Assembly: GCA_963924565.1 (NCBI GenBank)
Contig: OZ004613.1
Coordinates: 21,514,001 to 21,578,000 of the forward strand
DNA from: Ascidiella aspersa
Lineage: Eukaryota
Length of the DNA stretch: 64,000 nucleotides
Direction of reading: 5' to 3'
Shown here piece after piece: positions 8,898 through 40,146 of this stretch (the stretch's first letter is position 1; each line of letters begins with the position of its first letter). Position numbers and translations under genes: made by a program. The notes under the pieces are model-generated. The model saw only the letters and a list, made by a program, of their open reading frames with translations. It did no database searches and was not told the origin of the DNA.

Positions 8898-9199
8898 AAA
8901 ACAATGGCATACTGCCACGTGCAGTGCCCATTCGGATGTATTTGAAGGCGTCTCGAGACACTTTTAAGGAAGGTGCCGTACGCTATTCCTATCCATAACG
9001 CTCGCTCTATCCATCGCGTCTACAAGAGAACATTTCGGGGTGGGGGGTTGGCTCTCGACCGAGCGCGAAGCATCGGGAAAGCATATGTGGACGTGCGTTG
9101 TGACGTAACTCCGTCTTGCGCGTGCGTAGATTCACCTATCGAAGTAGATCCGCCAATCAGCTATCGAACACCGGACAGAATGAACCATCTCACACATCC
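8898..9199 (-). ncRNA. RN7SK: 7SK snRNA copy 1 (first GAUC changed to GAUA)
   Basis: Reverse strand reads GGATGTG...TCCCGATGCTTCGCGCTCGGTCGAGAG...TACATCCGAATGGGCACTGCACGTGGCAGTATGCC-ATTGTTTT. This matches human 7SK landmarks: 5' GGAUGUG, UCCCGAAGCUGCGCGCUCGGUCG, and 3' ACAUCCAAAUGAGGCGCUGCAUGUGGCAGUCUGCC-U tract. Confidence 0.88.
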
Positions 9200-9843
9200 A
9201 CTGGAAACATCTGTATGGATGTCTTTATGCCGAGGCAATACGTATTTAGTTTTATTTGTGGCTTTTACGAAATCTAATGAGCCATAAATTCGCCACCAAT
9301 AAACTGAATTGCAAACTTTCATGATAAAATAAAATACTCATCCTTTAAAATATCAGCGAGATTTGTTTGCCAGTTTTTAAATGGACATACTAAATGTTAA
9401 TCAATTAATTTATTTCGCCCGTCGCTGACACCATATTAAAACTCGAAAATTGAACTTTCTTCTCCTTCGAACAACATGTAAAAATGGTGAAAGCTTATTA
9501 TTTTTATGTTACCGTGGAAATTGTAGATAGCGAAAGGACCGTCAATATTTAGAACAACAATTTTTTTTTCAATATAGTGTTTTTTATACCCTTCAACTGC
9601 AGTAAACTGTAATGCTCTACAAAAATTTTTACATAAAAAAAGAATAAAACTAATGTACTGATCAGATAATTTGGTTGTTAGTTGGATAAACAACAACAGT
9701 AAATTAGTTTTTCGCCATTGTTATAAACTTTTACCTTTATATAATGTGAAATAATAGTTTTGAAGCAGACATCCGTTAACTGGTCATAATGTAAGATAGC
9801 CTACTATTTCAGAAAAAGAAAATAACGAAGCAATTATCGAAAC

Positions 9844-10147
9844 AAAACAAGGACATATACTGCCACGTGCAGTGCCCATTCGGATGTGTTTGAAGGCGTC
9901 TCGAGACACTTTTAAGGAAGGGGCCGTACGCTATTCCTATCGATAACGCTCGCTCTATCCATCGCGTCTACAAGAGAACATTTCGGGGAGGGGGGTTGGC
10001 TCTCGACCGAGCGCGAAGCATCGGGAAAGCATATGTGGACGTGCGTTGTGACGTAACTCCGTCTTGCGCGTGTGTAGATTCACCTATCGAAGTAGATCCG
10101 CCAATCAGCGATCGAATACCGGACAGAATGAACCATCTCACACATCC
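9844..10147 (-). ncRNA. RN7SK: 7SK snRNA copy 2 (both GAUC motifs intact)
   Basis: Same landmarks as copy 1. 5' GGATGTG can pair with 3' CACATCC, and GATC-GCTGATTGGCG-GATC forms the apical helix. The 3' hairpin has a larger bulge and is followed by TTTT. Confidence 0.9.
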
Positions 10148-10919
10148 ACTGGGAACACCTGTATGAATGTCTTTATCCCGAGGTAGTTGCAATATAATTT
10201 TATTTGTGGCTTGTACGAAATTCAATGAGCCATAAATCCCCATAATTCCCACCTATGCCAAATGACGTGGTAAGGTTGCTGAACACTTACAAATATTCAA
10301 CTCATATATTACTCAAAAAAGCTTTTCTGGTAATTGCAATTGTTCTCTTTGCGATTTTTTAAAATATTGGTGTATTTGTTGTTCTAAATGCCTTTTAAAG
10401 TTTTGTCCGATAATACCGTATCGTAACCAATACCCGACGCGTGATAATTTCGCAACTTGATTTCACCTTAGAAGGTGAATTTATCGAAAAAATAGTAGGT
10501 TAGCAATTGACAGTAGACAACTTTCTCTGGGCTTAAAGACTTTTTGTCACGTCAAAAAACAAATACAGTAGAGATGATCAGGTCAACGACATAAAAACAA
10601 ATGAATTGAAACTGACGTCACGTGATCAAATTTACGTATGCGCCGTCACGGTCTGATTCAGACACCTACTATTGACCAGTGAACCCGATCGCACATTGTT
10701 AATGACCTTTAGACTTTTTTATTTCATTGTTGTGACAACAGTTCAGGTAGTGAAAAAAGATAAAAAACAACAAGACAACTGCTAGTAAGTTTATTGAAAA
10801 AACATTACATTAGTTTGGATTTTATTTTATTTTTTTGTATGTTTTGCAGTGGTACAGCTTCAGTACAGCCACTTGGTTTGCCAACAATAAATGTAAGCCT
10901 AATGTTTTTGCGCAGAACA

Positions 10920-11115
10920 ATGCCAAGTATTTGCATCCCTTTTTGCAAGAATAGGCCACCAACAAATACCATGTTTGCTGTGCCGAATAAAAAAATGTCA
11001 TGGAACGAAGAATGGGCAAAAAAATTTGAAAAAGTTATCCTAAGTCAGCGTGATGATAAAAATATCAAACAACCTTACCAAAAGCACTTCACAAAAGAGG
11101 ATATTATCAAAAGTT
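10920..11115 (+). pseudogene. Degenerate THAP zinc-finger coding relic (unit B)
   Basis: MPSICIPFCKNRPP...FAVP...W...PYQKHFTKEDI resembles the THAP C2CH pattern (MP..C..C...FP...W...CxxHF), but the third Cys is Tyr. Confidence 0.55.
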
Positions 11116-11526
11116 TGTATAAGCTATATATATATTTTCAATCAAGAGATTATTTTATATTATTTGCTATTGTTACCATAGTCTTTCTCAGTGGTATTCT
11201 CTTTATTTGTCGTTGATCAGGTGTAATGCGAAGTTCTATAAATTTTATGAATGTATAGCACAAAAACTGAACAAAAATAGAATGCAAAGTAGTTTTACGC
11301 CTAATATTTTATCACTTCTTCTTTAAATTCGTATATTCACTATGCCAGAAGCTAATACGCAATATATGCAAATTGAGCACATGGGCATTCTGCAGTGTCC
11401 TTGGAAGACCATTGATTTGCTTTACTTTCTTAAAAAGGGTGTTGTTACCCTACCATTATCCTCACCGTTGTACTCACACAAACCAAGAGATAGCTCGAAA
11501 GAAATGCGGATTGGACATAGTCAACT

Positions 11527-11940
11527 CAGGGTTGCCAGATAGTCAAAAAAAAAAAAAAAAAAAAAACTTGCCTCAAAAAGAGACAAAAAAAGCCAAATTT
11601 AATAAAAACCCTAACAAGCCTCTGCTTGTAAAAATGCAATAAATGGTCATGCTTACATTGATGTTCTCTTTTTGTGGCAATTTTTCTCAAGTTTTTTTTT
11701 AAGTTTTTTTGGCAAATTTTTTTTTTGGCAACTTTATGCGTTTTGAGATTTTTTTGTCAGGTTTTCCGTTTTTCTGTTAGTTTAATATAACGCTTACGAA
11801 ATTTTTGAATGAAACCCAAAAAGTCCTAACAAAGCCAAAGTTCATTTCGATTTTTCAAAAAAAAAAAATAAAATCCAAAGGGTTTCAAAAAAGCCCAAAT
11901 TTTCAAATTTGGCTGTAAAAAATCCTAACTGGCAATCCTG
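11527..11940. mobile_element. hAT-type MITE (TIR CAGGGTTGCCAG), unit B copy
   Basis: Same TIRs as 251-583, perfect TSD AGTCAACT. Confidence 0.85.
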
Positions 11941-13015
11941 AGTCAACTCACTAAGCTGAAATAGAAATATGTAATGATGTAAATTGTATAATTATGCAAA
12001 CGTGTTTGGAAACATTTCGGATCATACGCTTATAGCAAAAACCTTTAATGGTAATGGTAAATTGGATTGAGGTATTTACCTCTTTTAAACTATCCTTATT
12101 GTTGAAACAGGAAATTAAGTAGTTTTGTGATGCCGTTATTTGAAAAAAACTGTTCACTAATTGATAGTTGTTTTCTCTGTGATGCCGTTATTTAAAAAAA
12201 ACTGTTCACTAATTGATAGTTGTTTTCTATTTAATACTTGACTTAATTGGGCTTTACAAAGCACAAAGAACAATTAGGGTTGATGCAAATTTCCCTGGTA
12301 CTTTGCTCCAAGTTTCCCTGGTACTTGTTTCCAGACTTTGACTAATAATGATTTTTTTAGGGAAGTAACTCAGAATTATGTGATGTTGACACACCCGTTG
12401 TATTTCTTCAATGCAAAAAAGGGAGATATTGTCAACTTTGAACCACTGGTCGAAACTGTTTTTCTGCCTCTTACATAGGGCATTAGTCAAGCAAATGTTT
12501 ATAGCAAATAATTGCTGCTGTCCTACCTACCATTATAAATTAAAAAATGTAAGTTTAGCGGACCACTTTTGAAGCTTTGGTTGGCTGCATATGGCATATA
12601 TAGGTGTACTTTATATCGTGGTAACCAGTCGGTGTTAACTACAGAACAACAAAAAACTAAACAAAATATAATACCCGCGTATGCCAATTTTACAAACAGA
12701 GTGTCAATATTTTGATTTTTGATACGACGCTCGGCTTCTTACGTGTGTCTGTATGCTTTTATTCTTCCTATGCACAAGTAACACTAAAAAAATAAACTAT
12801 AGGTGTGTTTTTTTCTTAATTTAATGGTTGTTTTAATGCAATATTTGTAAAAGATTGACTGTAATTTCCGAAAAATTTGTTAAATTCAGTAGTTTTTCGA
12901 AGATTCTGTGACGTCACAAGCGACTTGAAACAATGGATTTTCGCCAGGGCAAAGTTTTTTTTTACATTTTTTGTCATATTCGTTCAATGTCTTTTGTCGG
13001 GAACGACAGAAATTT

Positions 13016-16000
13016 ATGGCAGAAACGAAAGCTATGATTTTTATTCGAATCGACTCGAAACTGTTAGCGCCCTTCAATGGGTTGTTCGGCATTACGTTCG
13101 AACCAGAGCAGCCTGCGAATGATTTCGAGGCTTTGCAGAAATGCTTCTATTCAATGGTCCCTGACTCATTGGAGAAACTAAAGACCAACCCGGCTTTTAA
13201 CATCGCTATGTTGTTGGTCAGTGTGATAATGTTTATCGCACTCTTCGAGGGTGGATGTGTTCTCGTAGAAAGGTAAATATGTTTCCAATTAACAAACTTT
13301 ATATTTCTTTAAATGTTTTTGTTTCAAAAGTCATGTAATTTACCATAATCCACACTTGAGTTTTAACAGCTATATTACAACGTTTTTTTTTTTTTTGAAA
13401 CGTTGTTTAGGTTTGTGTCCTTTCTACGAAGAATTGTGCGTTCGAGGAAAGCTGCACTTGAAAAGGGCTTTAAGGTAAAGCACAGGTTACACCAGTATTT
13501 CAGTTGTTTGATCGGAATAGCTGCATTAATTTAAGTTTTCTTAAAAAAAAGTAAAAACATAATTCTGAAGTTGTAGGATGCGGCTAAACTTTTGAATGCG
13601 ATGTTTGCTAGCTAGTAGGCCTACCATATGTCCTCTTTTAGGAGGGTTTGTCCTCTTTTTACAAGAAAAGTAAATGGTCCTCCGAGGACGCTCAAAAATG
13701 CCCAAATGTCCTCTTTTTTCGCATTTCGAGTTAGTTGATATAGTTTCAAATTTCAACTTGACTTTTATAGGCGAGACGTTGTATTTATTTCCAACAAATT
13801 ACTGTAGCCATGAAACATGCTAAATTGCTGGTTTAAAGCAGGTTTTCCAACAAATTGCCCTATCAGCCCCCACATTAAAAACTTTACATTTTGCGCGGGA
13901 AGACGATTTTGCTGCTTGAAATTGCGGGGCTGTAATAACGTTATTTGCAAAATTTGCACGGCTGAAAATGGAGTACTATACTGAAAACTGTTAGCGCGAC
14001 AAAAGTTTTGCGCGGTTGACTACGCACTGTAACTGGATTTTACATGAAATGCGCGGCTATGACCGCGGCCTCAGTGTTACTGTATGGCAGGCTATGTTCT
14101 TATTTCTTACAGAAGCTTGTCTAATTAGTCTATAGCAGGGGTCGACAACCTTCGGCCCGCGGGCCGGATACGGCCCGCCGTCTATTTAACAAACTAGACA
14201 CGAGTCCATTTCACATACTTTTTGACTATTTAACTACGTAAGTGCAAAAATTTTCGCGCTACGCGCGAATTATCTTTATACATTCAGTTAGTTTACGTCC
14301 GTGGAAGGCAAACGGAATACGTATTCTAAATTTTTTGACATATATATCGCCCGGTCTTAAAACGTTACCAGATACTGAATTAGGTTAAGCAACAAAGTTA
14401 TCGCGTTTCTTCAAAGTAATTTTCTTACACTTTTAATTAGTAGTATAGATGACAACGTGTGGACTCGAATTTTACACCAGACAAACGCTTTTTTTCGCGC
14501 TTAGCGCCAACACTTTACTGCCTCCTTAAATGTAATTAAACACGTCTTTAAGCGCAAAAAAGTCCGAGACTTGATTGATTCACACAGCGGTTTTACCATT
14601 TTAATAACACTATTTTTAGTTAACTTTTTGTGCGGTCCGCAGAGACCTTTCTGAGTTTGGTTTTGGCCCGCCACTAAAAAAAGGTTGCCGACCCCTGCTC
14701 TATATAGCATACATTTAATTTCAATGATATTTTGTGTAAACAATTTCATGATCTCGTTAAAATGATCATTCCTCATTGGCTAAAGTTAAAGGAACCGCAA
14801 AGTATTCATGGGATGAATCTGAAAAATAAATTTGTTTGTTGTTTTGGAAAGTTTTGACTGCAGCTACCAAGGAAATGTAAAGCATCAGCAAACTTAAACT
14901 TAACAATTCTACTTCCGTTTTACTTGCCAGAAAAAATGTCCTCTGTTTTATCATGTAGTTGTGGGCCGCGTGAATGCTCTGCATATATTGTATACAATTT
15001 CTACCAACATTTATCTAGTTAATGTATTTTTTTTATTTACCATTATAATATTGCTATTGTATCGTGAGTAACATTTATCCAGCTTTCACTACAAGATTAA
15101 CATAATGTATTCATGTTATGTGTTTCGTTCGAACTTTTACGTGATTGCGGCTGCCGCCATTCCGCTGTGAAAATGCTATGTAGTTTTAATCTTTTATGCA
15201 TTAATACGTCTAAGGCAGTGGTTCTCAACCTTTTTTCTTTCGTGGCCCATTTACGTTGCAAATAAAGTCTGTGGCCCAAAACATTTTTTTGACAGAAAAA
15301 GCTGTATAATAGGTTTAGAACAAAACACAGCAGAACATATTTCAAAACAGATTATTATTTCAATCCTGCATTAGTGAGACACTTGCGGCTGGAATTTTGC
15401 ATTACTTTTTAATGCCTTCCCAAGCCATTATTCCTGTAAAATTAAATATAGTGACACCAAAGAAACTAAATCTAACTTTTCTAAATTGGTCTGTTGCCCA
15501 CCTCAAATGTTCTTATGGCCCACTGGTTGAGAACCGCTGGTCTAAGGTAAACGTTTCGCCACCTGGATTTAGCTTCATATTTGCCAACGAGTTCGTTTAA
15601 TACAAAAGGTGTTTCTAAGAACAATTGTTTCATGGCATAACTTTGTGACGTCATTTTAATGCCTCCAACTCAAAACAAATATCCTGGATTCGCCGTTTTG
15701 TAGTTGTTTTACGTAGCGGGCCTTCAATAGCTTTAAAAGTGTATTTTGGGCCGCGACAAATAAATTTGCCGACCACTGTACTAGGATATACGACTGTTTT
15801 AACCTGTGAGCTTCATTTCATAAAAGGTATTGCAATACAATACTTCACAAAACTACAAGCAAAATCATAACGTCGGCTTGTAAAAGTGGTGGAAAAAATG
15901 TAACGTCGCCCTTCTGTCTCAAATACCTCTACATATTGTAATAGTCTTGTTTTTAATGACAGAATTTTCTGCGAATTATCATGCTTTATTCGAAAAATGC

Positions 16001-18912
16001 TACATTTATAAACCAAGCAAACATTCATTTTAATTTTAAAGAACTATAACCCTTAGTAATGCCCTTTTTTACGTTTTTGCGTAAGCCGTTATGACTAAGC
16101 TTTCAATGTATGAATACCATTTTTTGTTACCTGTAATTGTCTATTTCTAAGTTTGTTAATTTGTGCATGCAATATTTTTTCACAAAGATTTCAAACAACC
16201 CAAACAACGATAAGTTGCTGACAATTTGCATTCCGGCAAGAAAGAAATTCGAAAATATAGGATTGCGAGGTAATTGCTGTGGGATTTTATATTGATTGCT
16301 GCCTTGGGCTTAGTTGTACACATTTTCAACCCATCTTTGTGTATTTATAGGTCTACCAAATGTCGCCGTGAAGTCCAATGCGAAACCTTCTCTCAAATTA
16401 CCATTCGAACCGTTCCTGTTACCTGCTGATATGGTCGTGTTTCTTCAAACAGGGTTTCCGACCAATGGACCACGCGTACATTTTATCATCACCTCCGACA
16501 TGTTTGAAATATTCCTTGCTCACTTGGAAAGGAATGTCTTGACCAAGTCTGAAGCTCTTCTGACTAAATTAAAGCAGAGTAGGGTACAGGATTTCTTAAC
16601 CCCATCGCCTGTAGGTTCACCGATTCTCCCCCTATGCTCAGCACAGAGCAGCCCAACTATCCAGGCCGTGTCTAAATCACCGCAGCAGGTCTTCATTTAT
16701 TGCACGATTCAACCTGCCAAATCCTCTGTAAAACGCCCAATTACTCAAACCTGCTCAACCCAGACGATTAACTCAGTAAGAGCACAATCCTTATCGGTCG
16801 GAAGCCAAACCTTTCAGTTTGTCACAACGCCAATTCCAACACAGACCATCAAAAAATGCTTCATGCCTGCCCGTATCCAAACGGTTAATCCGATCCTCAA
16901 GTCAGTTCCAACCCAGACTTCCCAATCTGTTGGCAAATCCGCATCCACACAGACCTCTATTTCGACAACCGCCCCTGTTTTCACTCAAACTATTGGACAT
17001 GACTCGAAAAGTTCACTTGCTGTGTCGACTTCAACTCAGACCTTCCAACGTCCCATGCTCTCAGCGTCAATGTCTAGTCAGACTTCCAAAACTGTTGGTA
17101 TCACTCTTTCCACCCAGACTGTACCAGTCGTTAGTTCGCCTGTAAGCACACAAACAACTCAAACTAAACCGGATAATGTACTACCATCGGACATTGGAAC
17201 CCTACAAAAACGACAAAGCACAACCACATTCACCCAAACTATTTTTGGAACTGTTCGAATGTTGCCGGCGCTAAAACCCAGATCAAAGTTCAACAAAGGA
17301 ACACAAACTACTACTCTTCCTGCGAGGGCTGGTACTTCGAAGAAAGTAAATAAAACTGACAAATCTTCCGTAGTGGCAAAAATACTGCGCCCAGTACTTA
17401 GTAAGTCCCATGTTGTCGTCACAAGCTATCCAGGATCTGATGAACTGGGAGGATTCCTTGATCCTGAACATGAATATTGGCTTCAGAAATGGTCCAAAAG
17501 GAAGCACCCTTTTGTAAAAATTCCAAAATTCAGCAATAACGATATCATAAAGGCAATTAACAAATTGCCCAATGAAGAAAGCGTTGGAACAACTCCCACC
17601 GAACAAGATTGGGAGAGGTATTACCAAGAGGAGTTGGCGGAACAGGCAAAAGAAGACGCACAGCGAATGGCACAGAAGGCATATTGCAAAAGACAGGACA
17701 TAAATTCCTTCCGTAATCTCAGAGATACAACGAGAAAAGATACACTTCTTGTAGTTGAAGACATTATGAAAGCCATTAATCAACTACCAAAGAAAAAACA
17801 CGTTCGCCAGGCCCCCACAGAAGAAGACTGGGAGCGTTACTACCAAGAGGAGTTGGCAGAGCAGGAGAAAGAAGACGCACAGCGGCTGGCGATGAAGGCA
17901 AGATCCAAAAAATCAACAAAATATAGGTCTTCCTTTCCGTCAAATCTTGGGGAGACACCTAAGACAAAAAAACCTACTGCTGCTGGATGTCACTCCAAAT
18001 TGCGCACACCAAGCACAATCAAGACAGCGATAAAAGTAAGCACTTCTCAGTTGACAGCTGCACCCACCTCTCGAAAAGCACCCAAAGGTTCTCCTTTTAA
18101 ACTTTGTCCACCAACAAGACTTAAGGAACCACAAAAAGTCGATTCTTCCTCGAAACTCCGTGCACCGATTAATCACAAGGCTCAAATTGTGGTAACGAAC
18201 CAGTCAAAGCTGCGACAGCCAAGCAAGTTAGAACGACCGGTGTCCAAGCGTTGTGGATCCAATCATCAGATTACACCGAAAGACTTGAGTGATGCGCTTA
18301 AAATGATGCCCAAGATTAAGTCGTCTCCGATTTCCGAGTCTCCAACTTTTCATGATGCACAAAAAATCGATGAGAAAAAAGAAGATTGGATGGCAAACAT
18401 GCAGAGAGCCTTGACAAGGGAGAAGTTGTTCAGGATTCAAGATGACCCAGAGCATCGCTGCACCTCATCCTCGGTCGTCGGCAAGATGAGAAAGCCAACT
18501 AGGATGAGAAGAATAATTTTGGAAGAGGTGGATTTCCTGGATGAAATAAAGGAACTGGCGGAACCTTTCAACCTCGTTCCATGCGTTTCCGGTGGTGCAC
18601 GGCGGTTAGGAAAAATAAAGGTAAAACATTTTTATTGATTAGTTCTTATTCAATATTTTGCATAGTGTTAAACTCTTACTTGATTTACAGCCAGACGATG
18701 CCAGCTTTTTCGATCTGGAACCACAACTGATGGATTTTGTTGACGAGTTTACCGACGACCTGCCACTGATTACAAACGAAGATATCCGCCAGCTGTGCGA
18801 TCGAACCCCGCACCTATACAGGATGACTGACGCAGAAGAACAGGAGGTGGAAGCTTGGCTGCACACTTGCAACATCCCCAGTCAAATGCAAGTCGATCCA
18901 CTCATGTTTTGA
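13016..18912 (+). CDS. TQT-array membrane protein, copy B, ~964 aa; join(13016..13272,13411..13474,16188..16269,16351..18620,18691..18912)
   Basis: Same exon structure as copy A, GT-AG sites intact (AAG|gtaaaa...tttacag|CCA). One in-frame codon deletion (EKKED). Confidence 0.8.
13616..14944. mobile_element. Unit-B-specific truncated hAT (Blackjack-like end) insertion replacing part of intron 2
   Basis: Begins TAGGCCTACCATATGTCC with subterminal GTCCTC repeats. Absent from units A and C. The right end is lost together with the left end of the resident MITE. Confidence 0.55.
14136..14697. mobile_element. hAT-type MITE (TIR CAGGGGTCG[A/G]CAACC) nested in the unit-B insertion
   Basis: CAGGGGTCGACAACC...GGTTGCCGACCCCTG, imperfect TSD GTCTATAG/CTCTATAT. 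A related end occurs at 44937. Confidence 0.75.
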
Positions 18913-19232
18913 GTGATATGGAGATATTTCTCTAAAGACAATGTGATCGCACGGATCACAACCATTCGGCCGGCGCCGAAAAGACGCCTAAATGTTTATT
19001 ATTTTGTATTTCATGACTTTTTTAATAAATTTTATATATATATTTATGTCGGTATAGGTCCTTTATTAGAGAATTAGGGAAACTACGAAAAACAAGCATT
19101 TGTCATTTGATTTTATTTAAAGTTCAGACCGCAGACTATTGCGTTACTCTTATTGTGATATTTTAGTTTCAAAATATAGCATTTGTATGTACGTTTGGTG
19201 GGTAAACCTCAAACTAACTGCAACATAATGTT

Positions 19233-20160
19233 TTGGTTGATACTTATTACATCACGGGAAAAGTGCCAGAAAATCCCCCAAAAAACGACGTGAAAACACA
19301 CAAGGTGTTTTACACGTCATCCACATTTGGTAAGGCCTTAAAAATTACACTCAAAATTGGTCTTATATTAACGAGTATACTGAATATAAGAAAAAAGACT
19401 AAATACGTCCAAGGCGATAAATTGAGTTGATGAAAGCATTGGAGCGTTATTAACAAAATAAATGGTATATTTATATATCGTTAATTTGGTGATCTATCGT
19501 TGTTCTCGGTCAAACTCGTGCACAAATAGGGAGCTGAAATCTAAAAAAATGCGTAAATTTAGTTTAAATTGGCAAATAAGGAAGGCCGAACGTGCAATTA
19601 TTTATATAGCGCCTTTGGTTAAATAAATATGTTTTAGCGGTAAAATTGATCCGGCGGTTTTCTGTTCGCATTTCGCTGCCATAGGATCAATAAGTCAAGA
19701 CATTAAGCAGTGTTTCTTCCCACAGTTCCGCTCAATCATCGTCATCCGTTGCGAGTTTTTTGGTTTTTTTCGCTCTTCGCTCCGCCACGAAAATTAGGTT
19801 TCGTCAGGTGAAACTCACCTCCACTGTCACGAACCATTTGTCTGTTCCAGACGATCCATATTAGAACTGTCGATAATGTAAGTCATGGGTTTCGTGTTAG
19901 CTGTTATAAAACAAGACTGTTCCAAGGGTTTTACTGGCGGTTTTCGAAACTGTAGAATCTCCGTTTTTCAAGCCAATTTTTTTCATTTTTGACACTGTCT
20001 TGAATGCGGAAATGAACCACTTGCTTGTGCAATTTAATTATTCAATGTCAACGTCAGAATACAACCGAAACTTGACTAAAACTATGAGTCGGAATGCGAC
20101 CTGAATCCGTTAGAATGATGGGTAAATGCCAGAATAAGATTTATCATGTTATCTAACCAA
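19233..20160 (+). pseudogene. Decayed hAT transposase relic (possible BED finger and C-terminal dimerisation remnants)
   Basis: ~20090-20155 (and ~33125-33190 in unit C) translates ECDLNPLE*WVN(A/G)RIRFIMLS, like the hAT dimerisation motif PLxWW...RFPxLS. ~19290-19380 KVFYTSSTFGKALKIT...LTS could be a BED finger with Cys lost. Confidence 0.4.
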
Positions 20161-22097: not shown

Positions 22098-22200
22098 CAC
22101 ACATGCTGAGGGATTACAAATATAATTTTATTTGTGGCTTTCACGAAACTTAGTGATCCATAAATCCGCCCACAATAAACTAAATGCAAACTTACACGAT
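22098..22200 (-). pseudogene. 7SK promoter-only remnant
   Basis: TATTTGTGGC at 22129-22138 plus the shared upstream flank; no gene body. Confidence 0.55.
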
Positions 22201-22540
22201 AACATGAACGGACCCTTTTTAAACTATTAGCTGCATTTTTATAGTCAGTAAACTAACTTGAACTGTAGTAAACTTTACTTAAACTGTAGTAAACTTGAAT
22301 GCCCGGCAATTATATTGGCATAAAGTCAGGACAAAACGAAAATGCTGATCAAACAATTCCGTTATTAGTTAGATGTTAGATAATAACCAATATAAGAAAA
22401 TTATTTTTTCGCCATTGTTATTAAATGTTTTCTTTTTATGTTGTGAAGTAACAGATTCTAGGTTGACATCCGTTGCCTTGTCCAAATATAAGATAGCCTA
22501 CAATTATAGAGATAGTAAATAACGAAACAAGTATCGAAAT

Positions 22541-31944: not shown

Positions 31945-34900
31945 GTGCTATGGAGATATTTCTCTAAAGACAATGTGATCGCACGGATCACAACCATTCG
32001 ACCGGCGCCGAAAAGACGCTTAAATGTTTATTATTTTGTATTTCATGACTTTTTTAATAAATTTTATATATATATATGTATATATATATGTCGGTATAGG
32101 TTCTTTATTAGAGAATAAGGGAGACGACGAAAAACAAGCATTTGTCATTTTATTTTATTTAAAGTTTAGACCGCAGACTATTGCGTTACTTTTATTGTGA
32201 TATTTTAGTTTCAAAATATAGCATTTGTATGTACGTTTGGTGCGTAAACCTCAAACTAAGTGCAACATAATTTTTTGGTTGATACTTAATACATTATGGG
32301 AAAAGTGCCAGAAAATCCCCCCGAAAAACGACGAGAAAACACACAAGGTGTTTTACACGTCATCCACATTTGGTAAGGCCTTAAAAATTACGCTCAAAAT
32401 TGCTCTTGTATTAACGAGTATACTGAATATAAGAAAAAATACTAAATACATCCAAGGCGATAAATTGAGTTGATGAAAGCATTGGAGCATTTTTAACAAA
32501 ATAAATGGTATATTTATATATCGTTAATTTGGTGATCTATAGTTGTTCTCGGTCAAACTCGTGCAAAAATAGGGAGCTGAAATCCAAAACAATGCGTAAA
32601 TTTAGTTTAAATTGGCAAATAAGGAAGTCCGAACGTGCAATTATTTATATAGCGCCTTTGGTTAAATAAATATGATTTAGCGGTAAAATTGATCCGGTGG
32701 TTTTCTGTTCGGATTTCGCTGCCAGAGGATCAATGTGTCAAGACATTAAGCAGTGTTTCTTCCGACAATTCCGCTCAACCAGTGTCAGCCGTTGCGAGTT
32801 TTTTGGGCTTTTCGCTCAGCCACAAAAATTAGGTTTCGTCAGGTGAAACTTACCTCCACTGTCACAAACTATTTGTCTGTTCCAGACGATTCATACTAGA
32901 ACTGTCGATAATGTAAGTCATGGGGTTCGTGTTAGCTGTTATAAACAGGACTGTCCCAAGGGTTTTTCTGGCGGTTTTCGAAACTGTAGAATCTCCGTTT
33001 TTCACGCCAATTGTTTTAAATTTTGACACTGTCTTGAATGCGGAAACGAACCACTTGCCTGTGTAATTTAATTATTTAATGTCAACGTCGGAATATAACC
33101 GAAACTTGACTAAAACTATGAGTCGGAATGCGACCTCAATCCGTTAGAATGATGGGTAAATGGCAGAATAAGATTTATCATGTTATCTAACCAACCAATA
33201 CCTGTCTTAACCAAACTTGAAACCCAAACAATGCACATACAGTCCAGAAAGGCCGGTGCCTAAACTGCGGCTCCCCATCGTCCCATATCTTATATCCCTA
33301 CCAATTATTTAGGCAATTTAAAACTTATTCCGAAGTGCTTTTGACCTATGTCTATAAGTGAAAGACTTATTCTGTCGGGTTAAGGTCTTATTTCTTCATA
33401 AATATTATTGCTCATTTATTTTATTATATTTCGTTAATCCTAATACTATTGTATTATATAAAATGCCACTGTAGACATGGTTGTTTTATAGTGTTTTCTT
33501 CGACTCGTGTTGTCAATTCAAGGTTAATATTTTTGCACTCGCCCGCTCACCTACTGTAAATAGAGAACAATTGGCTTCGGGCGAGTACTGAGTGACACCT
33601 ACTTGATAAAGCAAAAATGAGTTATGTTCGTCAGACCACTGGGCGCAATTTGTTGATTTGCGACAAATGATCTTAAAAGCCAAAGATTACAGACTAATTA
33701 CTGCCTAGTACAGCGGCGGATGTTTTAAGAAACACATTATTTTTTTAATTTGCCCTTTTTTTTAAGCGTAAGTAATTTGCCTAATGTTGCTGCCATCTAA
33801 CGTAGAAACGTTCACTTGAAATAATTTGTCAAAATATATGTTTTACCTCGAACGTGATGGGCCCTTAGGAAATCGTGAGATTAACACATGGTATTGTAAG
33901 ATACGACCTTACTTAGCATAACGACTTAAAATATAGGCTATATTGTCTAAGGTGCCATTTTTTAGATCTGCTTTAACCGTACATTTTTGTACTTACTTAA
34001 TCTAACGCCATTTTCCTACCACCTTCGCCGAACGCAACTCTATTCCATTGTTAAAGCGATGTCATATTTTACCTTTTGTGACAACTTATTTTCATGAAAA
34101 TAAATTTTGAAATTGCTACCCGCGCCTAGAATACTAGAAATTAAATTACTTTTTTGTGGTAAACGTTGCCCACCTGCGTTTTGACTTAAATTGGGTTCGT
34201 TTTCGATAAGATATTTAATTTATTAAGCAACTGTTTTATAATAAAACGATTGTTGGTATTATTTATAGAAAAACATTTATAGAAAATACTTATCAACTGC
34301 TGTCTAGCTTTAGTTCAACATAAATAATAACACGCTTTTCTGAACAACTTTTTTTAACGTTCTGTTATGATTCCTAGAACAAAATATATGAGCTTTTTGT
34401 CGAAGCTTAAAACCTCTACATTTTACGTGCGTTTTCTTCTATAAGCCTAGATTCCTAGAAGGTACAAAACTTCAGCTTATCGAAAACTATACCCTTACCT
34501 ATAGTTAAATTTATTTTAATTGGTGTAATCATAAAAAATAATACAACTTAAAACTTACAAAGAGTTTCTTTTGCATGAGGTTGACCGGAATGAAAATCGC
34601 TTTTGTAAAATGCCAACAATATGATTAATCATATATAACATTTTCCGTTAACGCCACTGTTGGTTGTACGATTTGCAATTCTGCTTTAGGAGGACTAATA
34701 TTTAACTCAAAGCTTGCGTCAACTTTTTGTTTTGTATAACTATAAGAAGAAAAAAAATGCAACTATATTGTGGAGTTTAACCTCTTGGTTACAAAGTTGT
34801 AAAATTACCTCAAAACAATACGTATAATACGCTGCTTTCCATAAAGGTCTTTTTTATATGGTTTTATTCGCACTTAAACTGTACTAAACTTTAATGCTCG

Positions 34901-35125
34901 GCAATTATATTGCCACAAAGGCAGGATAAAACGAAAATACTGATCAGAGAATTCCGTTATTAGTTATGTTAGATAATTACCAATATCAGAATATTATTTT
35001 TTCGCCATTGTTATCAAATGTTTTCCTTTTTATGTTGTGAAGTAACAGATTCTAAGTTGACATCCGTTACCTTGTCCAAATATAAGATAGCCTACAATTA
35101 TATAGATAGTAAATAACGAAACGTT

Positions 35126-35329
35126 TAACGCTCGCTCTATCCATCGCGTCTGCAAGAGAACATTTTGGGGTGGGGTGTTGGCTCTCGATCGAACGCGAAG
35201 CATCGGGAAAGCATATGTGGACGTGCGTTGTGACGTAACTCCGTCTTGCGCGTGTGTAGATTCACCTATCGAAGTAGATCCGCCAATCAACGATCGAATT
35301 CTGGACAGAATGAACCATCTCACACATCC
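35126..35329 (-). pseudogene. 7SK, 3'-truncated (5' ~200 nt with promoter)
   Basis: Matches from the 5' GGATGTG to ...GAGCGTTA, then joins downstream spacer. The 3' hairpin is missing. Confidence 0.85.
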
Positions 35330-35496
35330 ACTACGAACATCCGTATGGATGTCTTTATGCTGAGGCAATACCAGTATGTTTTTATTTGTGGCTTGTAGGA
35401 AACTTAGTGAACCATAAATCCGCCAACAATAAACTGAATGCAAACTTACACAGTAACATAAACAGACAACTTTCAAACTATTAGCTGCATTTTGTT

Positions 35497-35734
35497 GTCT
35501 CGAGACACTTGTGAGGAAGGGGTCGTACGCTATTCCTATCCATAACGCTCGCTCTATCCATCGCGTCTACAAGAGAACATTTCGGGGTGGGGGGTTGGCT
35601 CTCGACCGAGCGCGAAGCATCGGGAAAGCATATGTGGACGTAACTCCGTCTTGCGCGTGTTTAGATTCACCTATCGAAGTAGATCCGCCAATCAGCGATG
35701 GAATACCGGACAGAATGAACCATCTCACACATCC
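35497..35734 (-). pseudogene. 7SK, 3'-truncated, with the same 12-nt deletion as copy 3
   Basis: Matches from the 5' end to ...CTCGAGAC. Lacks CACATCC and the 3' hairpin; first GATC is altered (CATC). Confidence 0.85.
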
Positions 35735-36374
35735 ACTGGAAACATCTGTATGAATGTCTTTATGCCGAGGCAATACTAGTGTGTTTTTATTTGTGGCTTG
35801 TATAGGAAACTTAGTGAACCATAAATCCGCCAACAATAAACTGAATGCTTACATTATAACATAAACAGACAACTTTTAAACTATTAGCTGCATTTTGTTG
35901 TCAGAAAACCAATGGACATATTAATTGTTAATCAATAAATTAAAAAAAATCATTCAATCAATTTATCTCAACTGTCTTTGACACCACATCAAAACTCGAC
36001 AACTAAACTTTAGCTCCCCTCGAACAACACGTAAAAATGGTACAAGCGATTTTTTTCGCTGTTATCGATGACAATGTAGAGAACCATAGGACAATCCATA
36101 TTTTGAACAGCAAAATGTTTTTCAATATAGTTTTATTCGCACTTAAACTGCAGTAAACTGTAATGCTTGACAATTATATTGACATAAAAGCAAGATAAAA
36201 CAAAAATACTGATCAGACAATTCCATTATTAGTTAAATGTTAGATTAATAACCAATATAAGTAAATTATTTTTTCGCCATTGATATAAAAATTTCCGTTT
36301 TATATTTTGAAGTAACAGTTTCTTGGTTGACATCCGTTACCTGGTACAAATATAAGATAGCCTACAATTATTTA

Positions 36375-36442
36375 TCACCTATCGAAGTAGATCCGCCAAT
36401 CAGCGATCGAATACCGGACAGAATGAACCATCTCACACATCC
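36375..36442 (-). pseudogene. 7SK 5' fragment (68 nt, GAUC hairpin) with promoter
   Basis: GGATGTGTGAG...GATCGCTGATTGGCGGATC...GATAGGTGA, then spacer. Confidence 0.8.
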
Positions 36443-37025
36443 ACTGCGAACATCTGTATGAATGTCTTTATGGCGAGGCAATAGCAATATAATTTTATTT
36501 GTGGCTTGTGCGAAATTCAATGAGCCATAAATCCACCACCAATAAACTGAATTACAAACTTGAATGATAACATAAACAGACATTCTTAAAATAATTGCTG
36601 GATTTTTTTTTTCAGTCGCTAATACACATACACAATGTTAATCAATACATTTATCTTGCCCGTCGCTAACGCCACACCAGAACTCGACAACTTAAATTCG
36701 CTCCCTTCGAACAACATGTAATAATACTGTAAGCGATTTTCCTTTTTTCGATGTTATCGTGAAAAATCTAGATAGCTAAAGGACAATCCATTTATGGAAC
36801 GGCAATTTGTGTTTTAATATAAAGTTTTTTCGCACTACTGAAGTAAACTCAAATGTTCTACTAGGCTATAATTTGAACGAAAAAACAGGATAAAACGAAA
36901 ACACCGATGAGAAAATTAGGTTGTTAGTTAGTTAGACAACCAATATCATTGAATTATATTTTCACCATTGTTGTGTCAGTTTTTTTCATTGAAACAAGAT
37001 TTTCAGAGATAGTAAATAACGAAAC

Positions 37026-37326
37026 AAAACAAGGGCATACTGCCACGTGCAGTGCCCATTCGGATGTGTTTGAAGGCGTCTCGAGACACTTTTAAGGAAG
37101 GGGCCGTACGCTATTCCTATCCATAACGCTCGCTCTATCCATCGCGTCTACAAGAGAACATTTCGGGGTGGGGGTTGGCTCTCGACCGAGCGCGAAGCAT
37201 CGGGAAAGCATATGTGGACGTGCGTTGTGACGTAACTCCGTCTTGCGCGTGTGTAGATTCACCTATCGAAGTAGATCTGCCAATCAGCGATCGAATACCG
37301 GACAGAATGAACAATCTCACACATCC
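37026..37326 (-). ncRNA. RN7SK: 7SK snRNA copy (all landmarks intact; alternative proximal flank)
   Basis: GGATGTG/CACATCC pair, two GATC motifs, central motif, 3' hairpin GGCACTGCACGTGGCAGTATGCC and TTTT. Confidence 0.9.
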
Positions 37327-38485
37327 ATTTGTAGAACCGACGCATACGTCTTTGTACAGAGCAAAATTCATTATGTTTGTATTTGTGGCGTGTAGGTAAC
37401 AAAAAACTAAAGATGTTAGCTATACTAGATTTGCTAAACAGCATGTAGAAATTTTCGATATTTTCGTTATTGATAAACACTAATGATTCTTTACATTGAT
37501 TTTTTTTCCATATTTGATAATTTCGTTACTGATTATTTGATAATTTCGTTACTGATAACACATATTCGCCAAAACGAACTGACAATTTGACCCAAGAGAT
37601 TTCCTTGAAAGATTCATTTTTTGCGTCACGTTTCGTAATTTTGCATAATGCTTAACGTATAGCCGTACATCGATGGATGTATGAGATGATTCGTTCTGTC
37701 TGGTATTTGACCTGGATTTATGTCGAGGGCGTAAAATATTTCACGCGTAGGATAAAAAGCCGTTTTAAATAGACACACATTTTAAGTTTGAAGCGAAATA
37801 ACTTAACGTCTCCTTATATTGGCAACCAAATTAGAAAAGTCTTGCAATGCCCATCTGTAACTCGTCAGCGCCCACAGGGGGGCGGTACCGGCCAAGATTG
37901 GAAGCACTGATATAACCGCAATATAACTATAATACCAACGTTGCCATATTTGAATACCCATAGTCCATGACTAACAGAATTATGGTTTTAATTATTAAAA
38001 TATAGACCATAAAAGTCAAAAAAACACGCCTTAACTTTTCAGAATTTTTGAGAAACCTGCTATTTAAATTTAACGAAACAGTGTACAAGCAATAAATCTG
38101 AAATTTTCGCACAGAGTTTGGAAATTATTTTTGACTGACGAAACAAAATACGATGTGACGTACCGAACCTTGAAGAGAAACTAAAATAAGGTTGTGATTT
38201 ATGAATTGAAGTTGTTCGCACAATTTTGAACGAATTTTCCGATTTACATGTACAAGAAATGGCATTTTTTATCGATATATTAAATCATGGATTGTAAAGC
38301 ACATTTTAGCGTTTTTCTCTAATGCAGATTTCAGCAATAAATTTTCGACATGCAGGGATTATCCTTGTTGATAGAAAGAAATTTACCGCCCATGGATTTA
38401 TGACTCATTGTTTTTTGTACAAGACACAAATAAAATTATTTTGCTATTGTCTCTGCATAAAGACCTTTATACAGATGTTTCCAGT

Positions 38486-38790
38486 GGATGTGTAAGATGG
38501 TTCATTTTGTCCGGTATTCGATCGCTGATTGGCGGATTTACTTCGATAGGTGAATCTACACACGCGCAAGACGGAGTTAGGTCACACCGCACGTCCACAT
38601 ATGCTTTCCCGATGCTTCGCGCTCGGTCGAGAGCCAACCCCCCACCCCGAAATGTTCTCTTGTAGACGCGGTGGATAGAGCGAGCGTTATGGATAGGAAT
38701 AGCGTACGGCCCCTTCCTTAAAAGTGTCTCGAGACGCCTTCAAACACATTCGAATGTGCACTGCACGTGGCAGTATGCCATCGTTCTTTT
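38486..38790 (+). ncRNA. RN7SK: 7SK copy, inverted orientation (second GAUC changed to GAUU; CACATTC; GTGCA in the 3' stem)
   Basis: GGATGTGTAAGATGG...GCACTGCACGTGGCAGTATGCCATCGTTCTTTTTT. Confidence 0.85.
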
Positions 38791-39390
38791 TCGTTATTTA
38801 CTATCTCTGAAAATATAGGCTTTGTTATATTTGGCCAAGGTAAGGTTGTCTGCTTCTTTAAAAACCTAACACAACAATGGCGAAAAAATAATTTAATGAT
38901 ATTGGTTATCTAACTAACTAATAACCTAATTTTCTCATCGGTGTTTTCGTTTTATTCTGTTTTTTGTAAAAATTATAGCCTAGTAGAACATTGGAGTTTA
39001 CTTCAGTAGTGCAAAAAAAACTATATATTTAAAAACAAATTGTAGTTTTAAATATCGATTGTTTTATAGCTATCTACAACTTCCACGATAGCGGTAAAAA
39101 AGAAAATCGCTTGCAGCATTTTTACGTGTTGTTCGAATTAGACGAATGCTTAGTTATAACGTTCTGCTGTGGTTTCTGCGACGCGCGAGACAGTATGTCC
39201 ATTTAATTTAGTTTACTAACAACAAAATACATCTGATATTTTAAAGAATGTCTGTTTATTTTAACATTTAAGTTTGCAATCCAGTTTATTGTTGGCGAAT
39301 TTATGGCTCATTAAGTTTCGTAAAAGCCACAAATAAAAACATAATGGTAAAGCCTCAGCATAAATACATTCATACAGATGATACCTACAC

Positions 39391-39429
39391 GCCACAAATA
39401 CAAACATAATGAATTTTGCTCTGTACAAA
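39391..39429 (+). promoter_or_regulatory. Candidate Pol III type-3 promoter: PSE-like GCCACAAATA (-63..-54) and TATA-like TACAAA (-30..-25)
   Basis: The same motif sits at the same distance from the 5' G in all ten 7SK copies that keep a 5' end. Confidence 0.7.
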
Positions 39430-39453
39430 GACGTTTGCTTAGGTTCTACAAAT

Positions 39454-39757
39454 GGATGTGTGAGATGGTTCATTCTATCCGGTATTCGATCGCTGATTGG
39501 CGGATCTACTTCGATAGGTGAATCTACACACGCGCAAGACGGAGTTACGTCACAACGCACGTCCACATATGCTTTCCCGATGCTTTGCGCTCGGTCGAGA
39601 GCCAACCCCCCACCCCGAAATGTTCTCTTGTATAGATGCGATGGATAGAGCGAGCGTTATGGATAGGAATAGCGTACGGCCCCTTCCTTAAAAGTGTCTC
39701 GAGACGCCTTCAAACACATCCGCATGGGCACTGCACGTGGCAGTTTGCCATGGTTTT
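39454..39757 (+). ncRNA. RN7SK: 7SK snRNA copy, inverted orientation (landmarks intact)
   Basis: GGATGTGTGAG...GATCGCTGATTGGCGGATC...CACATCCGCATGGGCACTGCACGTGGCAGTTTGCCATGGTTTT. Confidence 0.9.
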
Positions 39758-40103
39758 ATTTCGATAATTGTTTCGTTATTTACTATCTCTCTAATTGTAG
39801 GCTATCTTATATTTCGACCAGGTAAAGGATGTCAACCTAGAATCTGTTACTTTACAACATAAAAAGGAAACATTTTATGACAATGGCGAAAAAATAGTTT
39901 GCTGATATTGGTTATTGTCTAACATCTAATTAATAACGGAATTGTCTGATGAGTATTTTGTTTTATCCTACTTTTATGTCAATATAATTGACGAGCATTA
40001 CAGTTTACTGCAGTTTAAGTGCGAATAGATGTATATTGAAAAACATACTGCTGTTCTAAATATGGATTGTCCTATAGCTCTCTACACTTTTTAACTGAAC
40101 AAA

Positions 40104-40146
40104 AACATCCGAATGGACACTGCACGTGGCAGTATGCCATGATTTT
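40104..40146 (+). pseudogene. 7SK 3'-end fragment
   Basis: AACATCCGAATGGACACTGCACGTGGCAGTATGCCATGATTTT. Confidence 0.8.

What the first reader, a model, noticed from the sequence alone, without database searches (positions are those of the whole stretch)
8898..40146. A promoter-bearing array of at least 12 7SK snRNA sequences (7 near-full-length) hidden behind spurious repeated ORFs
Seen: a ~300-nt element recurs 12 times, in sub-arrays of roughly 0.9-1.2 kb period. It starts GGATGTG and carries a GATC...GATC hairpin and TCCCGATGCTTCGCGCTCGGTCG. It ends CACATCC-GAATG-GGCACTGCACGTGGCAGTATGCC plus a T tract. Established: these are the 7SK elements for 5'-3' closure (M1), the HEXIM-binding GAUC helix, the central conserved motif and the LARP7-bound 3' hairpin. 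Vertebrates typically have one functional 7SK gene plus promoterless retrocopies. Here the copies keep upstream flanks, so they arose by DNA-level duplication. Inference: 7SK dosage, and so P-TEFb sequestration, may be amplified or diversified in this lineage. I recall multi-copy 7SK being reported in Ciona, so novelty needs a literature check.
Basis: partly seen in the sequence, partly recalled or inferred. Interest (0 to 1): 0.85.

Follow-up and report, generated by a model that had tools for sequence, protein, structure and literature searches.

The report
Clustered 7SK RNA gene family, ascidian
The window holds a real cluster of 7SK regulatory RNA genes that kept their own promoters when the DNA was duplicated, but most copies are collecting random damage, and the one flawless copy lies outside the window, so a higher 7SK dose is possible but not shown.

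Summary

The element is not a SINE. The 308-Mb genome has only 34 matches, of which 22 are near full-length. Nineteen of those lie in two mutually inverted clusters on one chromosome (about 54 kb and 82 kb, 168 kb apart). They ride in 11-13-kb repeat units together with a 780-codon TQT-rich reading frame.

Each copy carries a Pol III type-3 layout: CCACAAA at -62, a TATA-like box near -30, and a T4-5 terminator. The same upstream core stands before this genome's U1 and U6 genes. Among copies, the stretch from promoter to terminator is 72-98% alike; the far flanks are 15-55% alike.

The "amplified or diversified dosage" reading is not supported:
- Young duplicates diverge as fast as their flanks.
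- 102 substitutions fall evenly on conserved and variable blocks.
- Three of the seven full-length window copies have a damaged GAUC motif (a fourth keeps the GAUC letters but has lost the 3 bases beside the second motif), and only the copy at 37027-37326 passes every motif check.
- A singleton 0.94 Mb away, with unrelated flanks, equals the family consensus exactly and is probably the main gene.

Expression could not be tested.

The parts
37027..37326 (-). Full-length 7SK gene copy, the only one in the window with every checked motif intact (4 differences from the family consensus)
   Evidence: RF00100 at 53.6 bits; motif audit; differences G14T, G49A, C153del, A295C
37327..37426 (-). Proximal promoter of the 37027 copy (flank class 2): CCACAAATA at -62..-54 and GTACAAAGAC at about -31..-22
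   Evidence: Pattern hit at window 37348-37388; alignments
8899..9199 (-). Full-length 7SK copy with the first GAUC changed to GAUA (C38A) and C260T in the 3' strand of the closing helix
   Evidence: RF00100 at 48.4 bits; exact promoter module at 9221-9261
9845..10147 (-). Full-length 7SK copy with a 2-nt insertion and C293T in the 3' hairpin
   Evidence: RF00100 at 40.3 bits; exact promoter module at 10169-10209
22542..22830 (-). 7SK copy with a 12-nt internal deletion (positions 94-105), the second GAUC changed to GAUU, G2A, and a TATA-box variant
   Evidence: RF00100 at 49.3 bits, hit starts late in the sequence
23003..23087 (-). Internal 7SK fragment (positions 68-152), no promoter
   Evidence: blastn
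23784..24076 (-). Degenerate full-length 7SK copy: about 12 mutational events, a 3-nt deletion next to the second GAUC, and CCACAAATG in the upstream element
   Evidence: RF00100 at 36.1 bits, just over the cut-off
35126..35329 (-). 3'-truncated 7SK copy (positions 1-203) with an intact promoter module
   Evidence: blastn; promoter pattern at 35351-35391
35497..35734 (-). 3'-truncated 7SK copy (positions 1-249) with an intact promoter module
   Evidence: blastn; promoter pattern at 35756-35796; alignment A1
36375..36442 (-). 5' fragment of 7SK (positions 1-68) with a promoter module
   Evidence: blastn; promoter pattern at 36464-36504
38486..38786 (+). Full-length 7SK copy on the opposite strand (start of the inverted end of cluster A): upstream element ACACAAA, second GAUC changed to GAUU, 10 differences
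   Evidence: RF00100 at 43.8 bits
39454..39756 (+). Full-length 7SK copy on the + strand with the class-2 promoter; C133T in the central motif, A268C, a 2-nt insertion
   Evidence: RF00100 at 42.6 bits; promoter pattern at 39392-39432
40100..40149 (+). 3' fragment of 7SK (positions about 255-304)
   Evidence: blastn
235..38000 (.). Three tandem repeat units of about 13 kb (about 235-12409, 12410-25611, 25612-38000), 93-97% alike. Each carries one TQT-rich ORF and one 7SK sub-array in convergent orientation
   Evidence: Window self-comparison; region map
4029..6374 (+). Co-amplified reading frame of about 780 codons, rich in TQT motifs. Further copies at 16314-18638 and 29357-31801. No Pfam domain, but kept open with dN/dS 0.4-0.8, so probably a real coding exon

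Best explanation
The window holds the core of a genuine multigene family of 7SK snRNA genes in an ascidian genome.

Shown:
- Each unit is a self-contained Pol III type-3 gene. It has a proximal element with core CCACAAA at -62, a TATA-like box near -30, about 300 nt of 7SK, and a T4-5 terminator.
- The RNA has the 5'-3' closing helix, the GAUC/GAUC hairpin that binds HEXIM, the conserved central motif, and the 3' hairpin plus U tail that LARP7 binds.
- The family grew by DNA-level duplication. There are short sub-arrays, then amplification of an 11-13-kb unit that also carries a TQT-rich protein-coding exon, then an inverted duplication of the whole cluster.

Inferred:
- Over the long term, the stretch from promoter to terminator was kept alike in several lineages of copies while the flanks drifted. 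This could be through selection or through gene conversion limited to that stretch. Either way, the cluster's ancestors were working genes.
- Since the recent amplification the copies are redundant and evolve neutrally (birth and death). Some are truncated, have lost the promoter or have damaged GAUC motifs. A minority, such as 37027-37326, still look fit to be transcribed and assembled.
- The main, tightly constrained 7SK gene is probably the singleton at C7:20,571,650, outside the window. Its sequence equals the family consensus.
For: Identity as 7SK:
- Seven hits in the window and 17 in the genome lie above the RF00100 cut-off.
- The fold shows the closing helix 1-8/259-266, the GAUC helix and the 3' hairpin.
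- Short strings are shared with the published Didemnum vexillum 7SK (compared by eye).

Not a SINE: 34 matches in 308 Mb. Nineteen of the 22 near-full copies lie in C7:21.50-21.55 Mb and 21.72-21.80 Mb.

Promoter:
- 17 of the 18 genome-wide hits of CCACAAATA-N22-26-AYAAAGAC stand exactly at -62..-22 of 7SK copies.
- Three unrelated flank classes share only these two boxes.
- The same core stands at -57 of U1 and -61 of U6 in this genome. U6 and 7SK have a TATA-like box and U1 has none.

Conservation footprint: mean pairwise identity is 0.15-0.55 in the far flanks, 0.72-0.89 at -100..-1, 0.90-0.98 in the RNA, and falls again after +325. Old pairs have flanks 77-81% alike and RNA 96-98% alike.

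Relaxed constraint now:
- Young pairs have flanks 94-97% alike and RNA 97-98% alike. The neighbouring ORF has dS 0.03-0.048.
- 137 of 156 variant alignment columns are private to one copy.
- 42 of 102 substitutions fall in deeply conserved blocks, against 44 expected (p = 0.37).
- Lesions are listed.

Consensus copy: it has 0 differences and shares only 305 nt with the cluster.

Partner genes for HEXIM, a LARP7-type xRRM and MePCE/Bin3 are present.
Against: - No RNA evidence at all: the only public run holding the stretch is DNA. Which copies are transcribed is therefore unknown.
- A zero-difference copy could arise by chance or by recent gene conversion. With a mean of about 5 differences per copy, P(0) is roughly 1% per copy.
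- The even spread of substitutions has moderate power only. Weak selection on many redundant copies would look the same.
- The promoter elements are inferred from position and recurrence, not from binding data.
Confidence: 0.6

Rival explanations
1. Selected dosage amplification: most of the roughly 22 copies are active Pol III genes, and the cluster exists to raise 7SK output, much as the U1-U2-U6 array supplies spliceosomal RNAs.
For: Ten of the 12 window elements keep the promoter module. Terminators are kept in 20 of 21 copies. The promoter-to-terminator stretch is far better conserved than the flanks. Multi-copy snRNA arrays are the norm in this genome.
Against: All 44 U6 copies scored in the array have the identical top score, whereas 7SK copies range from 35 to 54 bits and differ by 1-26 alignment positions from the consensus. 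Young copies diverge at the neutral rate. Substitutions hit conserved blocks as often as variable ones. GAUC lesions, truncations and two copies that lost the upstream element are present.
Confidence: 0.2
2. Dead passengers: the cluster copies are silent duplicates carried along by amplification of the TQT-rich protein gene. Only the singleton at C7:20.57 Mb makes 7SK.
For: The singleton equals the consensus. The amplified unit carries an ORF that stays open under mild purifying selection, dN/dS 0.4-0.8. 7SK copies have evolved neutrally since the amplification.
Against: Flank classes that have diverged to 77-81% identity or beyond recognition still keep the two promoter boxes at fixed distances and a 96-98% identical RNA. 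Long-silent copies would not show this unless gene conversion covered exactly the promoter and the gene.
Confidence: 0.2
3. Functional diversification: variant copies (GAUA or GAUU in place of GAUC, changed 3' hairpins) make distinct 7SK particles with altered HEXIM or LARP7 binding, perhaps paired with the two HEXIM loci.
For: Two HEXIM-family loci exist, at C2:15.6 Mb and C5:31.09 Mb. The C53T variant (GAUU) occurs in two copies.
Against: Nearly all variants are private to one copy and spread at random. There is no conserved variant subfamily and no compensatory pattern: in the closing helix, 3 events keep pairing and 3 break it, as expected by chance.
Confidence: 0.05
4. Retroposed SINE-like element, or an assembly artefact such as duplicated haplotigs.
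For: In vertebrates 7SK gives rise to many retropseudogenes (established knowledge). Tandem units 93-97% alike can be mis-assembled.
Against: There are only 34 matches, and they are clustered. Copies have upstream promoters and shared flanks and no poly-A tails. An independent set of unitigs (run X1) covers unique flanks at about 30-40 and 7SK words at 250-770, roughly in line with about 20 copies, although that tool warns depth is not a copy number. Each copy carries its own private variants.
Confidence: 0.03

Closest known systems
7SK snRNA (Rfam RF00100), vertebrate RN7SK gene
   Same: Same RNA family. It has the GGAUGUG 5' end paired to CACAUCC near the 3' end, two GAUC motifs in the 5' hairpin, the central UCCCGA-GCU-CGCGCUCGGUCGA motif, a 3' hairpin with CUGCACGUGGCAG, and a U tail. 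The promoter is an external Pol III type with a proximal element and a TATA-like box.
   Different: Vertebrates have one working gene plus many promoterless retrocopies (established knowledge). Here about 22 near-full copies arose by DNA duplication and nearly all keep their promoters. The RNA is about 302 nt, with a shorter 5' hairpin and a divergent middle.
Didemnum vexillum 7SK (PMC5006418, supplementary sequence)
   Same: It is the closest published relative I could read. By eye it shares GGUAUU-GAUCGCUGAU, GAUCU-CUU-CGAUAGGUGA, UCCCGAUGCUUCGCGCUCGGUCGAG and GGCACUGCACGUGGCAGUAUGCCA. This fits the ascidian origin that other notes of this scan give for the genome.
   Different: That paper reports a single 7SK locus in a draft assembly. 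Here there are two clusters plus three dispersed copies.
Caenorhabditis elegans paired 7SK genes and the second Drosophila 7SK-like gene (as cited in PMC8406779)
   Same: These are cases of more than one promoter-bearing 7SK gene in an invertebrate genome. The near-identity of the two copies is ascribed to concerted evolution, and expression was detected from only one.
   Different: Those cases have two copies. Here there are about 22, in arrays, with visible decay.
Tandem snRNA gene arrays (this genome's 1193-bp U1-U2-U6 unit on C5)
   Same: The same core of the proximal element (CC[AG]CAAA) stands at about -57 to -62. U6 also has a TATA-like box. Both are multi-copy and tandem.
   Different: The U1-U2-U6 array is strictly periodic, and all 44 U6 copies scored in it are identical. 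The 7SK copies sit in irregular sub-arrays inside 11-13-kb units and are heterogeneous.

Membership tests
7SK snRNA (RF00100) | Score at or above the curated covariance-model cut-off (35 bits) | tested here: met
   Seven window copies at 36.1-53.6 bits; 17 genome-wide; singleton 50.1 bits
7SK snRNA (RF00100) | 5' hairpin with two GAUC motifs facing each other (HEXIM binding site) | tested here: met
   In the consensus, GAUC at 35-38 pairs with GAUC at 50-53 in the centroid fold. Among the 7 full-length window copies, both GAUC motifs are unchanged in 9845, 37027 and 39454. 8899 has C38A, 22542 and 38486 have C53T, and 23784 keeps the GAUC letters but has a 3-nt deletion next to the second motif.
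7SK snRNA (RF00100) | Closing helix between the 5' end (GGAUGUG) and CACAUCC near the 3' end | tested here: met
   MFE and centroid folds pair 1-8 with 259-266; the Rfam alignment agrees
7SK snRNA (RF00100) | 3' terminal hairpin followed by a U tract (LARP7 site and Pol III terminator) | tested here: met
   The Rfam alignment matches the hairpin at posterior probability 0.95 or more. T4-5 follows within 20 nt in 20 of 21 copies.
7SK snRNA (RF00100) | External Pol III type-3 promoter (proximal sequence element plus TATA box) | tested here: met
   CCACAAA at -62 and A[TC]AAAGA near -30 occur in three unrelated flank classes. The core is shared with this genome's U1 and U6 promoters. This rests on motifs and positions only, with no binding data.
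7SK snRNA (RF00100) | Transcribed, stable RNA bound by LARP7, MePCE and HEXIM, which sequesters P-TEFb | not testable with these tools
   No RNA run holds the stretch. Genes for HEXIM, an xRRM protein and Bin3/MePCE are present in the genome.
SINE or retropseudogene of 7SK | Hundreds to thousands of dispersed copies, no upstream promoter homology, A-rich tail, target-site duplications | tested here: not met
   34 matches, which are clustered. Flanks are shared between copies, and a promoter is present.

The most novel reading that the evidence does not exclude
This ascidian maintains an expressed multigene 7SK family. Variant copies (altered GAUC motifs or 3' hairpins) form distinct 7SK particles with different HEXIM or LARP7 affinity, perhaps matched to its two HEXIM loci. 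That would give graded or tissue-specific control of P-TEFb, which no other animal is known to have.
Probability: 0.06. Interest if true: 0.75.

Novelty: new member of a known kind. Interest (0 to 1): 0.4.

Why it matters
7SK is usually treated as a single-gene regulator of transcription elongation, and animal genomes with many promoter-bearing 7SK genes have hardly been described. This locus gives three things:
- A natural series of about 22 copies with defined lesions in the HEXIM, LARP7 and closing-helix elements.
- A clear definition of the ascidian snRNA-type Pol III promoter: core CC[AG]CAAA at about -60 plus a TATA-like box. That could be useful for small-RNA expression vectors in sea squirts.
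- A caution for annotation: Rfam hits above the cut-off here include truncated and decaying genes.

If even a few cluster copies are expressed, 7SK dosage in this lineage comes from several loci. The present evidence, however, points to ordinary birth-and-death evolution of duplicated genes, not to a new regulatory system.

Tried and rejected
- SINE or retrocopy reading: rejected on copy number, clustering and shared promoters.
- Assembly artefact: judged unlikely. Copies have private variants, and independent unitig depth is about 7-25 times that of the unique flanks. That tool warns depth is not a copy number.
- Expression test: the look-up of sequencing runs returned only one run, X1, which proved to be DNA unitigs. 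No statement on transcription is possible, and this says nothing about silence.
- Selection tests: the split between conserved blocks and the rest and the comparison with flank and synonymous divergence gave no sign of constraint on recent copies.
- Shared exact promoter in other genes: the two-box pattern hits only 7SK copies plus one unrelated site. U6 and U1 share only the core.
- Tandem Repeats Finder at score 200 or more, ARAGORN, and Pfam on ten ORFs at 49-63 kb and on the TQT ORFs found nothing, apart from one below-cut-off HypD match (18.8 bits against a cut-off of 25) on the third TQT ORF.
- The bacterial-type promoter and terminator scan is not meaningful here. It picked up only the 7SK 3' hairpins.
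Loci for the Bin3 hit could not be cut out.
- The key primary papers on invertebrate 7SK (Gruber 2008, Marz 2009, Yazbeck 2018) are not held.
I compared only short motifs by eye.
- Species identity was not established. "Ascidian" rests on other notes of this scan and on the similarity to D. vexillum 7SK.

Full report
**Observation.**
Rfam 15 scanned over the whole window gives seven matches to 7SK (RF00100) above the curated cut-off of 35 bits (36.1-53.6 bits, E 4e-11 to 6e-6), and no other RNA family. A blastn search with the best copy plus flanks finds exactly twelve pieces between 8886 and 40149:
- seven full-length copies: 8899, 9845, 22542, 23784 and 37027 on the minus strand, 38486 and 39454 on the plus strand;
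- two copies cut at the 3' end: 35126-35329 (positions 1-203) and 35497-35734 (positions 1-249);
- three fragments: 23003-23087, 36375-36442 and 40100-40149.

Folding the consensus copy pairs the 5' end 1-8 with 259-266, forms the GAUC/GAUC helix and forms the 3' hairpin. The only corrections are that spacing inside the sub-arrays is 0.37-1.24 kb, and that the sub-arrays lie in three tandem units of about 13 kb.

**Where the copies are.**
The window is C7:21,514,001-21,578,000 of a 308-Mb, 75-contig assembly. A DNA search of the whole genome with one 300-nt copy gives only 34 matches, 22 of them near full-length. I assembled 258 kb around the window from fetched loci. The map shows:
- **Cluster A**, C7:21,500,205-21,554,138. 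It has five units of 11-13 kb. Each has a sub-array of 7SK on the minus strand and a reading frame of about 780 codons on the plus strand. The cluster ends in a short inverted segment whose 7SK copies lie on the plus strand (window 38486-40149; inverted repeats).
- **A gap** of 168 kb without 7SK.
- **Cluster B**, C7:21,722,802-21,804,664. It has the opposite orientation of both 7SK and the reading frame, so it is a large inverted duplicate of A.
- **Three dispersed full-length copies**, at C7:20,571,650, C4:16,375,851 and C9:16,746,953.

The C9 copy shares more than 3 kb of flank with cluster B at about 91% identity. The C4 copy shares about 1.4 kb at about 76%. The C7:20.57 Mb copy shares only the 305-nt gene itself. 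This is DNA-level duplication, not retroposition, and the element is not a genome-wide SINE.

**Promoter and terminator.**
Alignment of 21 copies with flanks shows CCACAAA at -62..-56 and a TATA-like A[TC]AAAGA at about -30..-24. T4-5 follows within 20 nt of the 3' hairpin in 20 of 21 copies. The pattern CCACAAATA-N22-26-AYAAAGAC occurs 18 times in the genome, and 17 of those are at -62..-22 of a 7SK copy.

Three flank classes are otherwise hard or impossible to align: class 1, class 2 (copies 37027 and 39454), and the singleton. They share just these two boxes at the same distances.

This genome's U1, U2 and U6 genes sit in a 1193-bp tandem unit on C5. There, CCACAAAGA stands at -57 of U1 and CCGCAAAGA at -61 of U6. 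U6 has a TATA-like GATAAGG near -28, and U1 has none. That is the expected pattern for a shared SNAPc-type proximal element, with a TATA box marking the Pol III genes. It is a motif-and-position argument; no binding was tested. In the window, ten of the twelve elements carry the module, seven exactly and three with one substitution. This agrees with the scan's note s1-802527.

**Long-term conservation.**
Mean pairwise identity among 18 copies is 0.15-0.55 in the far flanks. It rises to 0.72-0.89 over -100..-1, peaking over the proximal element. It is 0.90-0.98 over the RNA, then falls to 0.75 and below 0.6 downstream. Copy pairs whose flanks are only 77-81% alike still have RNA regions 96-98% alike. 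The singleton, whose flanks are unrelated, is 96-99% alike to cluster copies over the gene.

So several lineages of copies kept promoter and gene while the surroundings drifted. This could be through purifying selection or through gene conversion limited to that stretch. Some variants are shared between neighbouring copies with divergent flanks, for example A235G/A236T in 21500198 and 21501172. That hints at gene conversion.

**Recent evolution looks neutral.**
- Pairs of copies from the recent unit amplification have flanks 94-97% alike and RNA regions 97-98% alike. The co-amplified reading frame has synonymous divergence 0.030-0.048 between the same units. The 7SK copies therefore diverge about as fast as neutral DNA.
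- Of 156 variant alignment columns, 137 are private to one copy.
- After collapsing shared variants and indels, there are 102 distinct substitutions. Of these, 42 fall in the 131 positions of the deeply conserved blocks (5' end, GAUC hairpin, central motif, 184-200, 3' end), against 44 expected (p = 0.37).
- In the closing helix, three events keep pairing (A3G, C260T, C265T) and three break it (G2A, G5A, G7A), as chance predicts (read).

A motif audit shows that only the 37027 copy keeps every checked element among the window's seven full-length copies:

| Copy | Lesions |
|---|---|
| 8899 | GAUC changed to GAUA; C260T |
| 9845 | 2-nt insertion and C293T in the 3' hairpin |
| 22542 | GAUU, a 12-nt deletion and G2A |
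| 23784 | about twelve events |
| 38486 | GAUU, C265T and a changed upstream element |
| 39454 | C133T in the central motif and A268C |

Two cluster-B copies have lost the proximal element through a deletion of about 60 nt. By contrast, all 44 U6 copies scored in the C5 array are identical.

**The consensus copy.**
The singleton at C7:20,571,650 (minus strand; L005:1501-1801) differs at none of 302 positions from the majority consensus of the 21 copies. Every other copy differs at 1-26 alignment positions. It has its own proximal element (CCACAAACG at -62), a TATA-like TACAAAT at -30, and a T5 terminator. An old, separate locus that has stayed at the family's ancestral sequence is best explained by strong constraint. 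I take it as the probable main 7SK gene. This is an inference. With about 5 differences per copy on average, a zero by chance is unlikely for any single copy but not impossible among 21.

**Context.**
- The genome encodes the partner proteins: two HEXIM-family loci (C2:15.6 Mb, confirmed as HEXIM-like by the protein atlas, and C5:31.09 Mb), one LARP7-type xRRM match (C5:31.13 Mb), and one Bin3/MePCE match (C7:24.78 Mb).
- The 780-codon TQT-rich frame has no Pfam domain. It stays open in five copies with dN/dS 0.4-0.8, so it is probably a real coding exon. The unit amplification may have been driven by it, by 7SK, or by neither.
- The only public run that holds the stretch is DNA. Its unitigs cover unique parts at about 30-40 and 7SK words at 250-770. 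This is roughly in line with about 20 copies, but the tool warns that depth is not a copy number.
- No RNA data were available, so expression is untested.

**Comparison with what is known.**
The RNA is an ordinary member of the 7SK family; every structural criterion I could test is met. By eye, the closest published sequence I could read is the single 7SK of the ascidian Didemnum vexillum. It shares the GAUC hairpin strings, the central motif and the 3' hairpin. That paper reports one locus.

Two nearly identical 7SK genes in C. elegans, with only one detectably expressed, and a second 7SK-like gene in Drosophila are on record. Ten full-text searches found no report of a large promoter-bearing 7SK cluster. 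However, the three primary papers on invertebrate 7SK are not held.

That the genome is an ascidian rests on other notes of this scan and on the D. vexillum similarity. I did not establish the species.

**Verdict.**
This is a real, correctly recognised 7SK gene cluster, made by DNA duplication and keeping its promoters. That is unusual in copy number for this RNA. The evidence points to birth-and-death evolution of redundant copies around a conserved main gene elsewhere, not to a selected amplification or diversification of P-TEFb control. Interest is moderate: it is a useful natural mutant series and a definition of the promoter, and it gives a testable question about which copies are expressed.

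Noticed in passing
window 4029-6374, 16314-18638, 29357-31801 (+); also C7:21507335-21509671 and 21726429-21728774: A 775-815-codon frame rich in TQT and S/T/Q, with no Pfam domain, is co-amplified with the 7SK sub-arrays. It stays open in five copies with dN/dS 0.4-0.8 and dS 0.03-0.05, so it is probably a real coding exon of a lineage-specific gene and not a spurious ORF.
   Followed up: partly
G000:C7:20571650-20571950 (-), locus L005:1501-1801: A singleton 7SK gene 0.94 Mb from the window. It is identical to the consensus of all 21 copies, has unrelated flanks, and has its own CCACAAA box, TATA-like box and T5 terminator. It is the probable main 7SK gene.
   Followed up: yes
G000:C5:29.506-29.588 Mb, loci L038-L049: A strictly periodic 1193-bp tandem unit carries U2 and U1 on one strand and U6 on the other. 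At least 44 U6 copies have identical scores. The U1 and U6 promoters share a CC[AG]CAAAGA element at -57 and -61.
   Followed up: partly
G000:C5:31093636-31096638 and C5:31134428-31134592: A second, split HEXIM-family match lies only about 40 kb from the genome's single LARP7-type xRRM (RRM_3) match. A separate intronless HEXIM ORF of 231 aa lies at C2:15.6 Mb (L050:1318-2013, minus strand). So there may be two HEXIM paralogues, one linked to the LARP7-like gene.
   Followed up: no
window 35126-36504 (-): Three truncated 7SK pieces (1-203, 1-249, 1-68) each keep an exact promoter module. If transcribed, they would give truncated or read-through chimeric Pol III RNAs lacking the LARP7 hairpin.
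   Followed up: no
G000:C6:17873415-17873526 and 17878836-17878947; C8:4093710-4093813; C5:17518212-17518257: Short 7SK fragments lie outside the clusters: two identical pieces of positions 6-117, 5.4 kb apart on C6, and a small inverted pair on C8. Their origin was not examined.
   Followed up: no
window 40200-64000: This stretch is richer in G+C (0.38-0.46) than the repeat region, and none of its ten ORFs of 90 aa or more has a Pfam match. Its content was not identified.
   Followed up: partly
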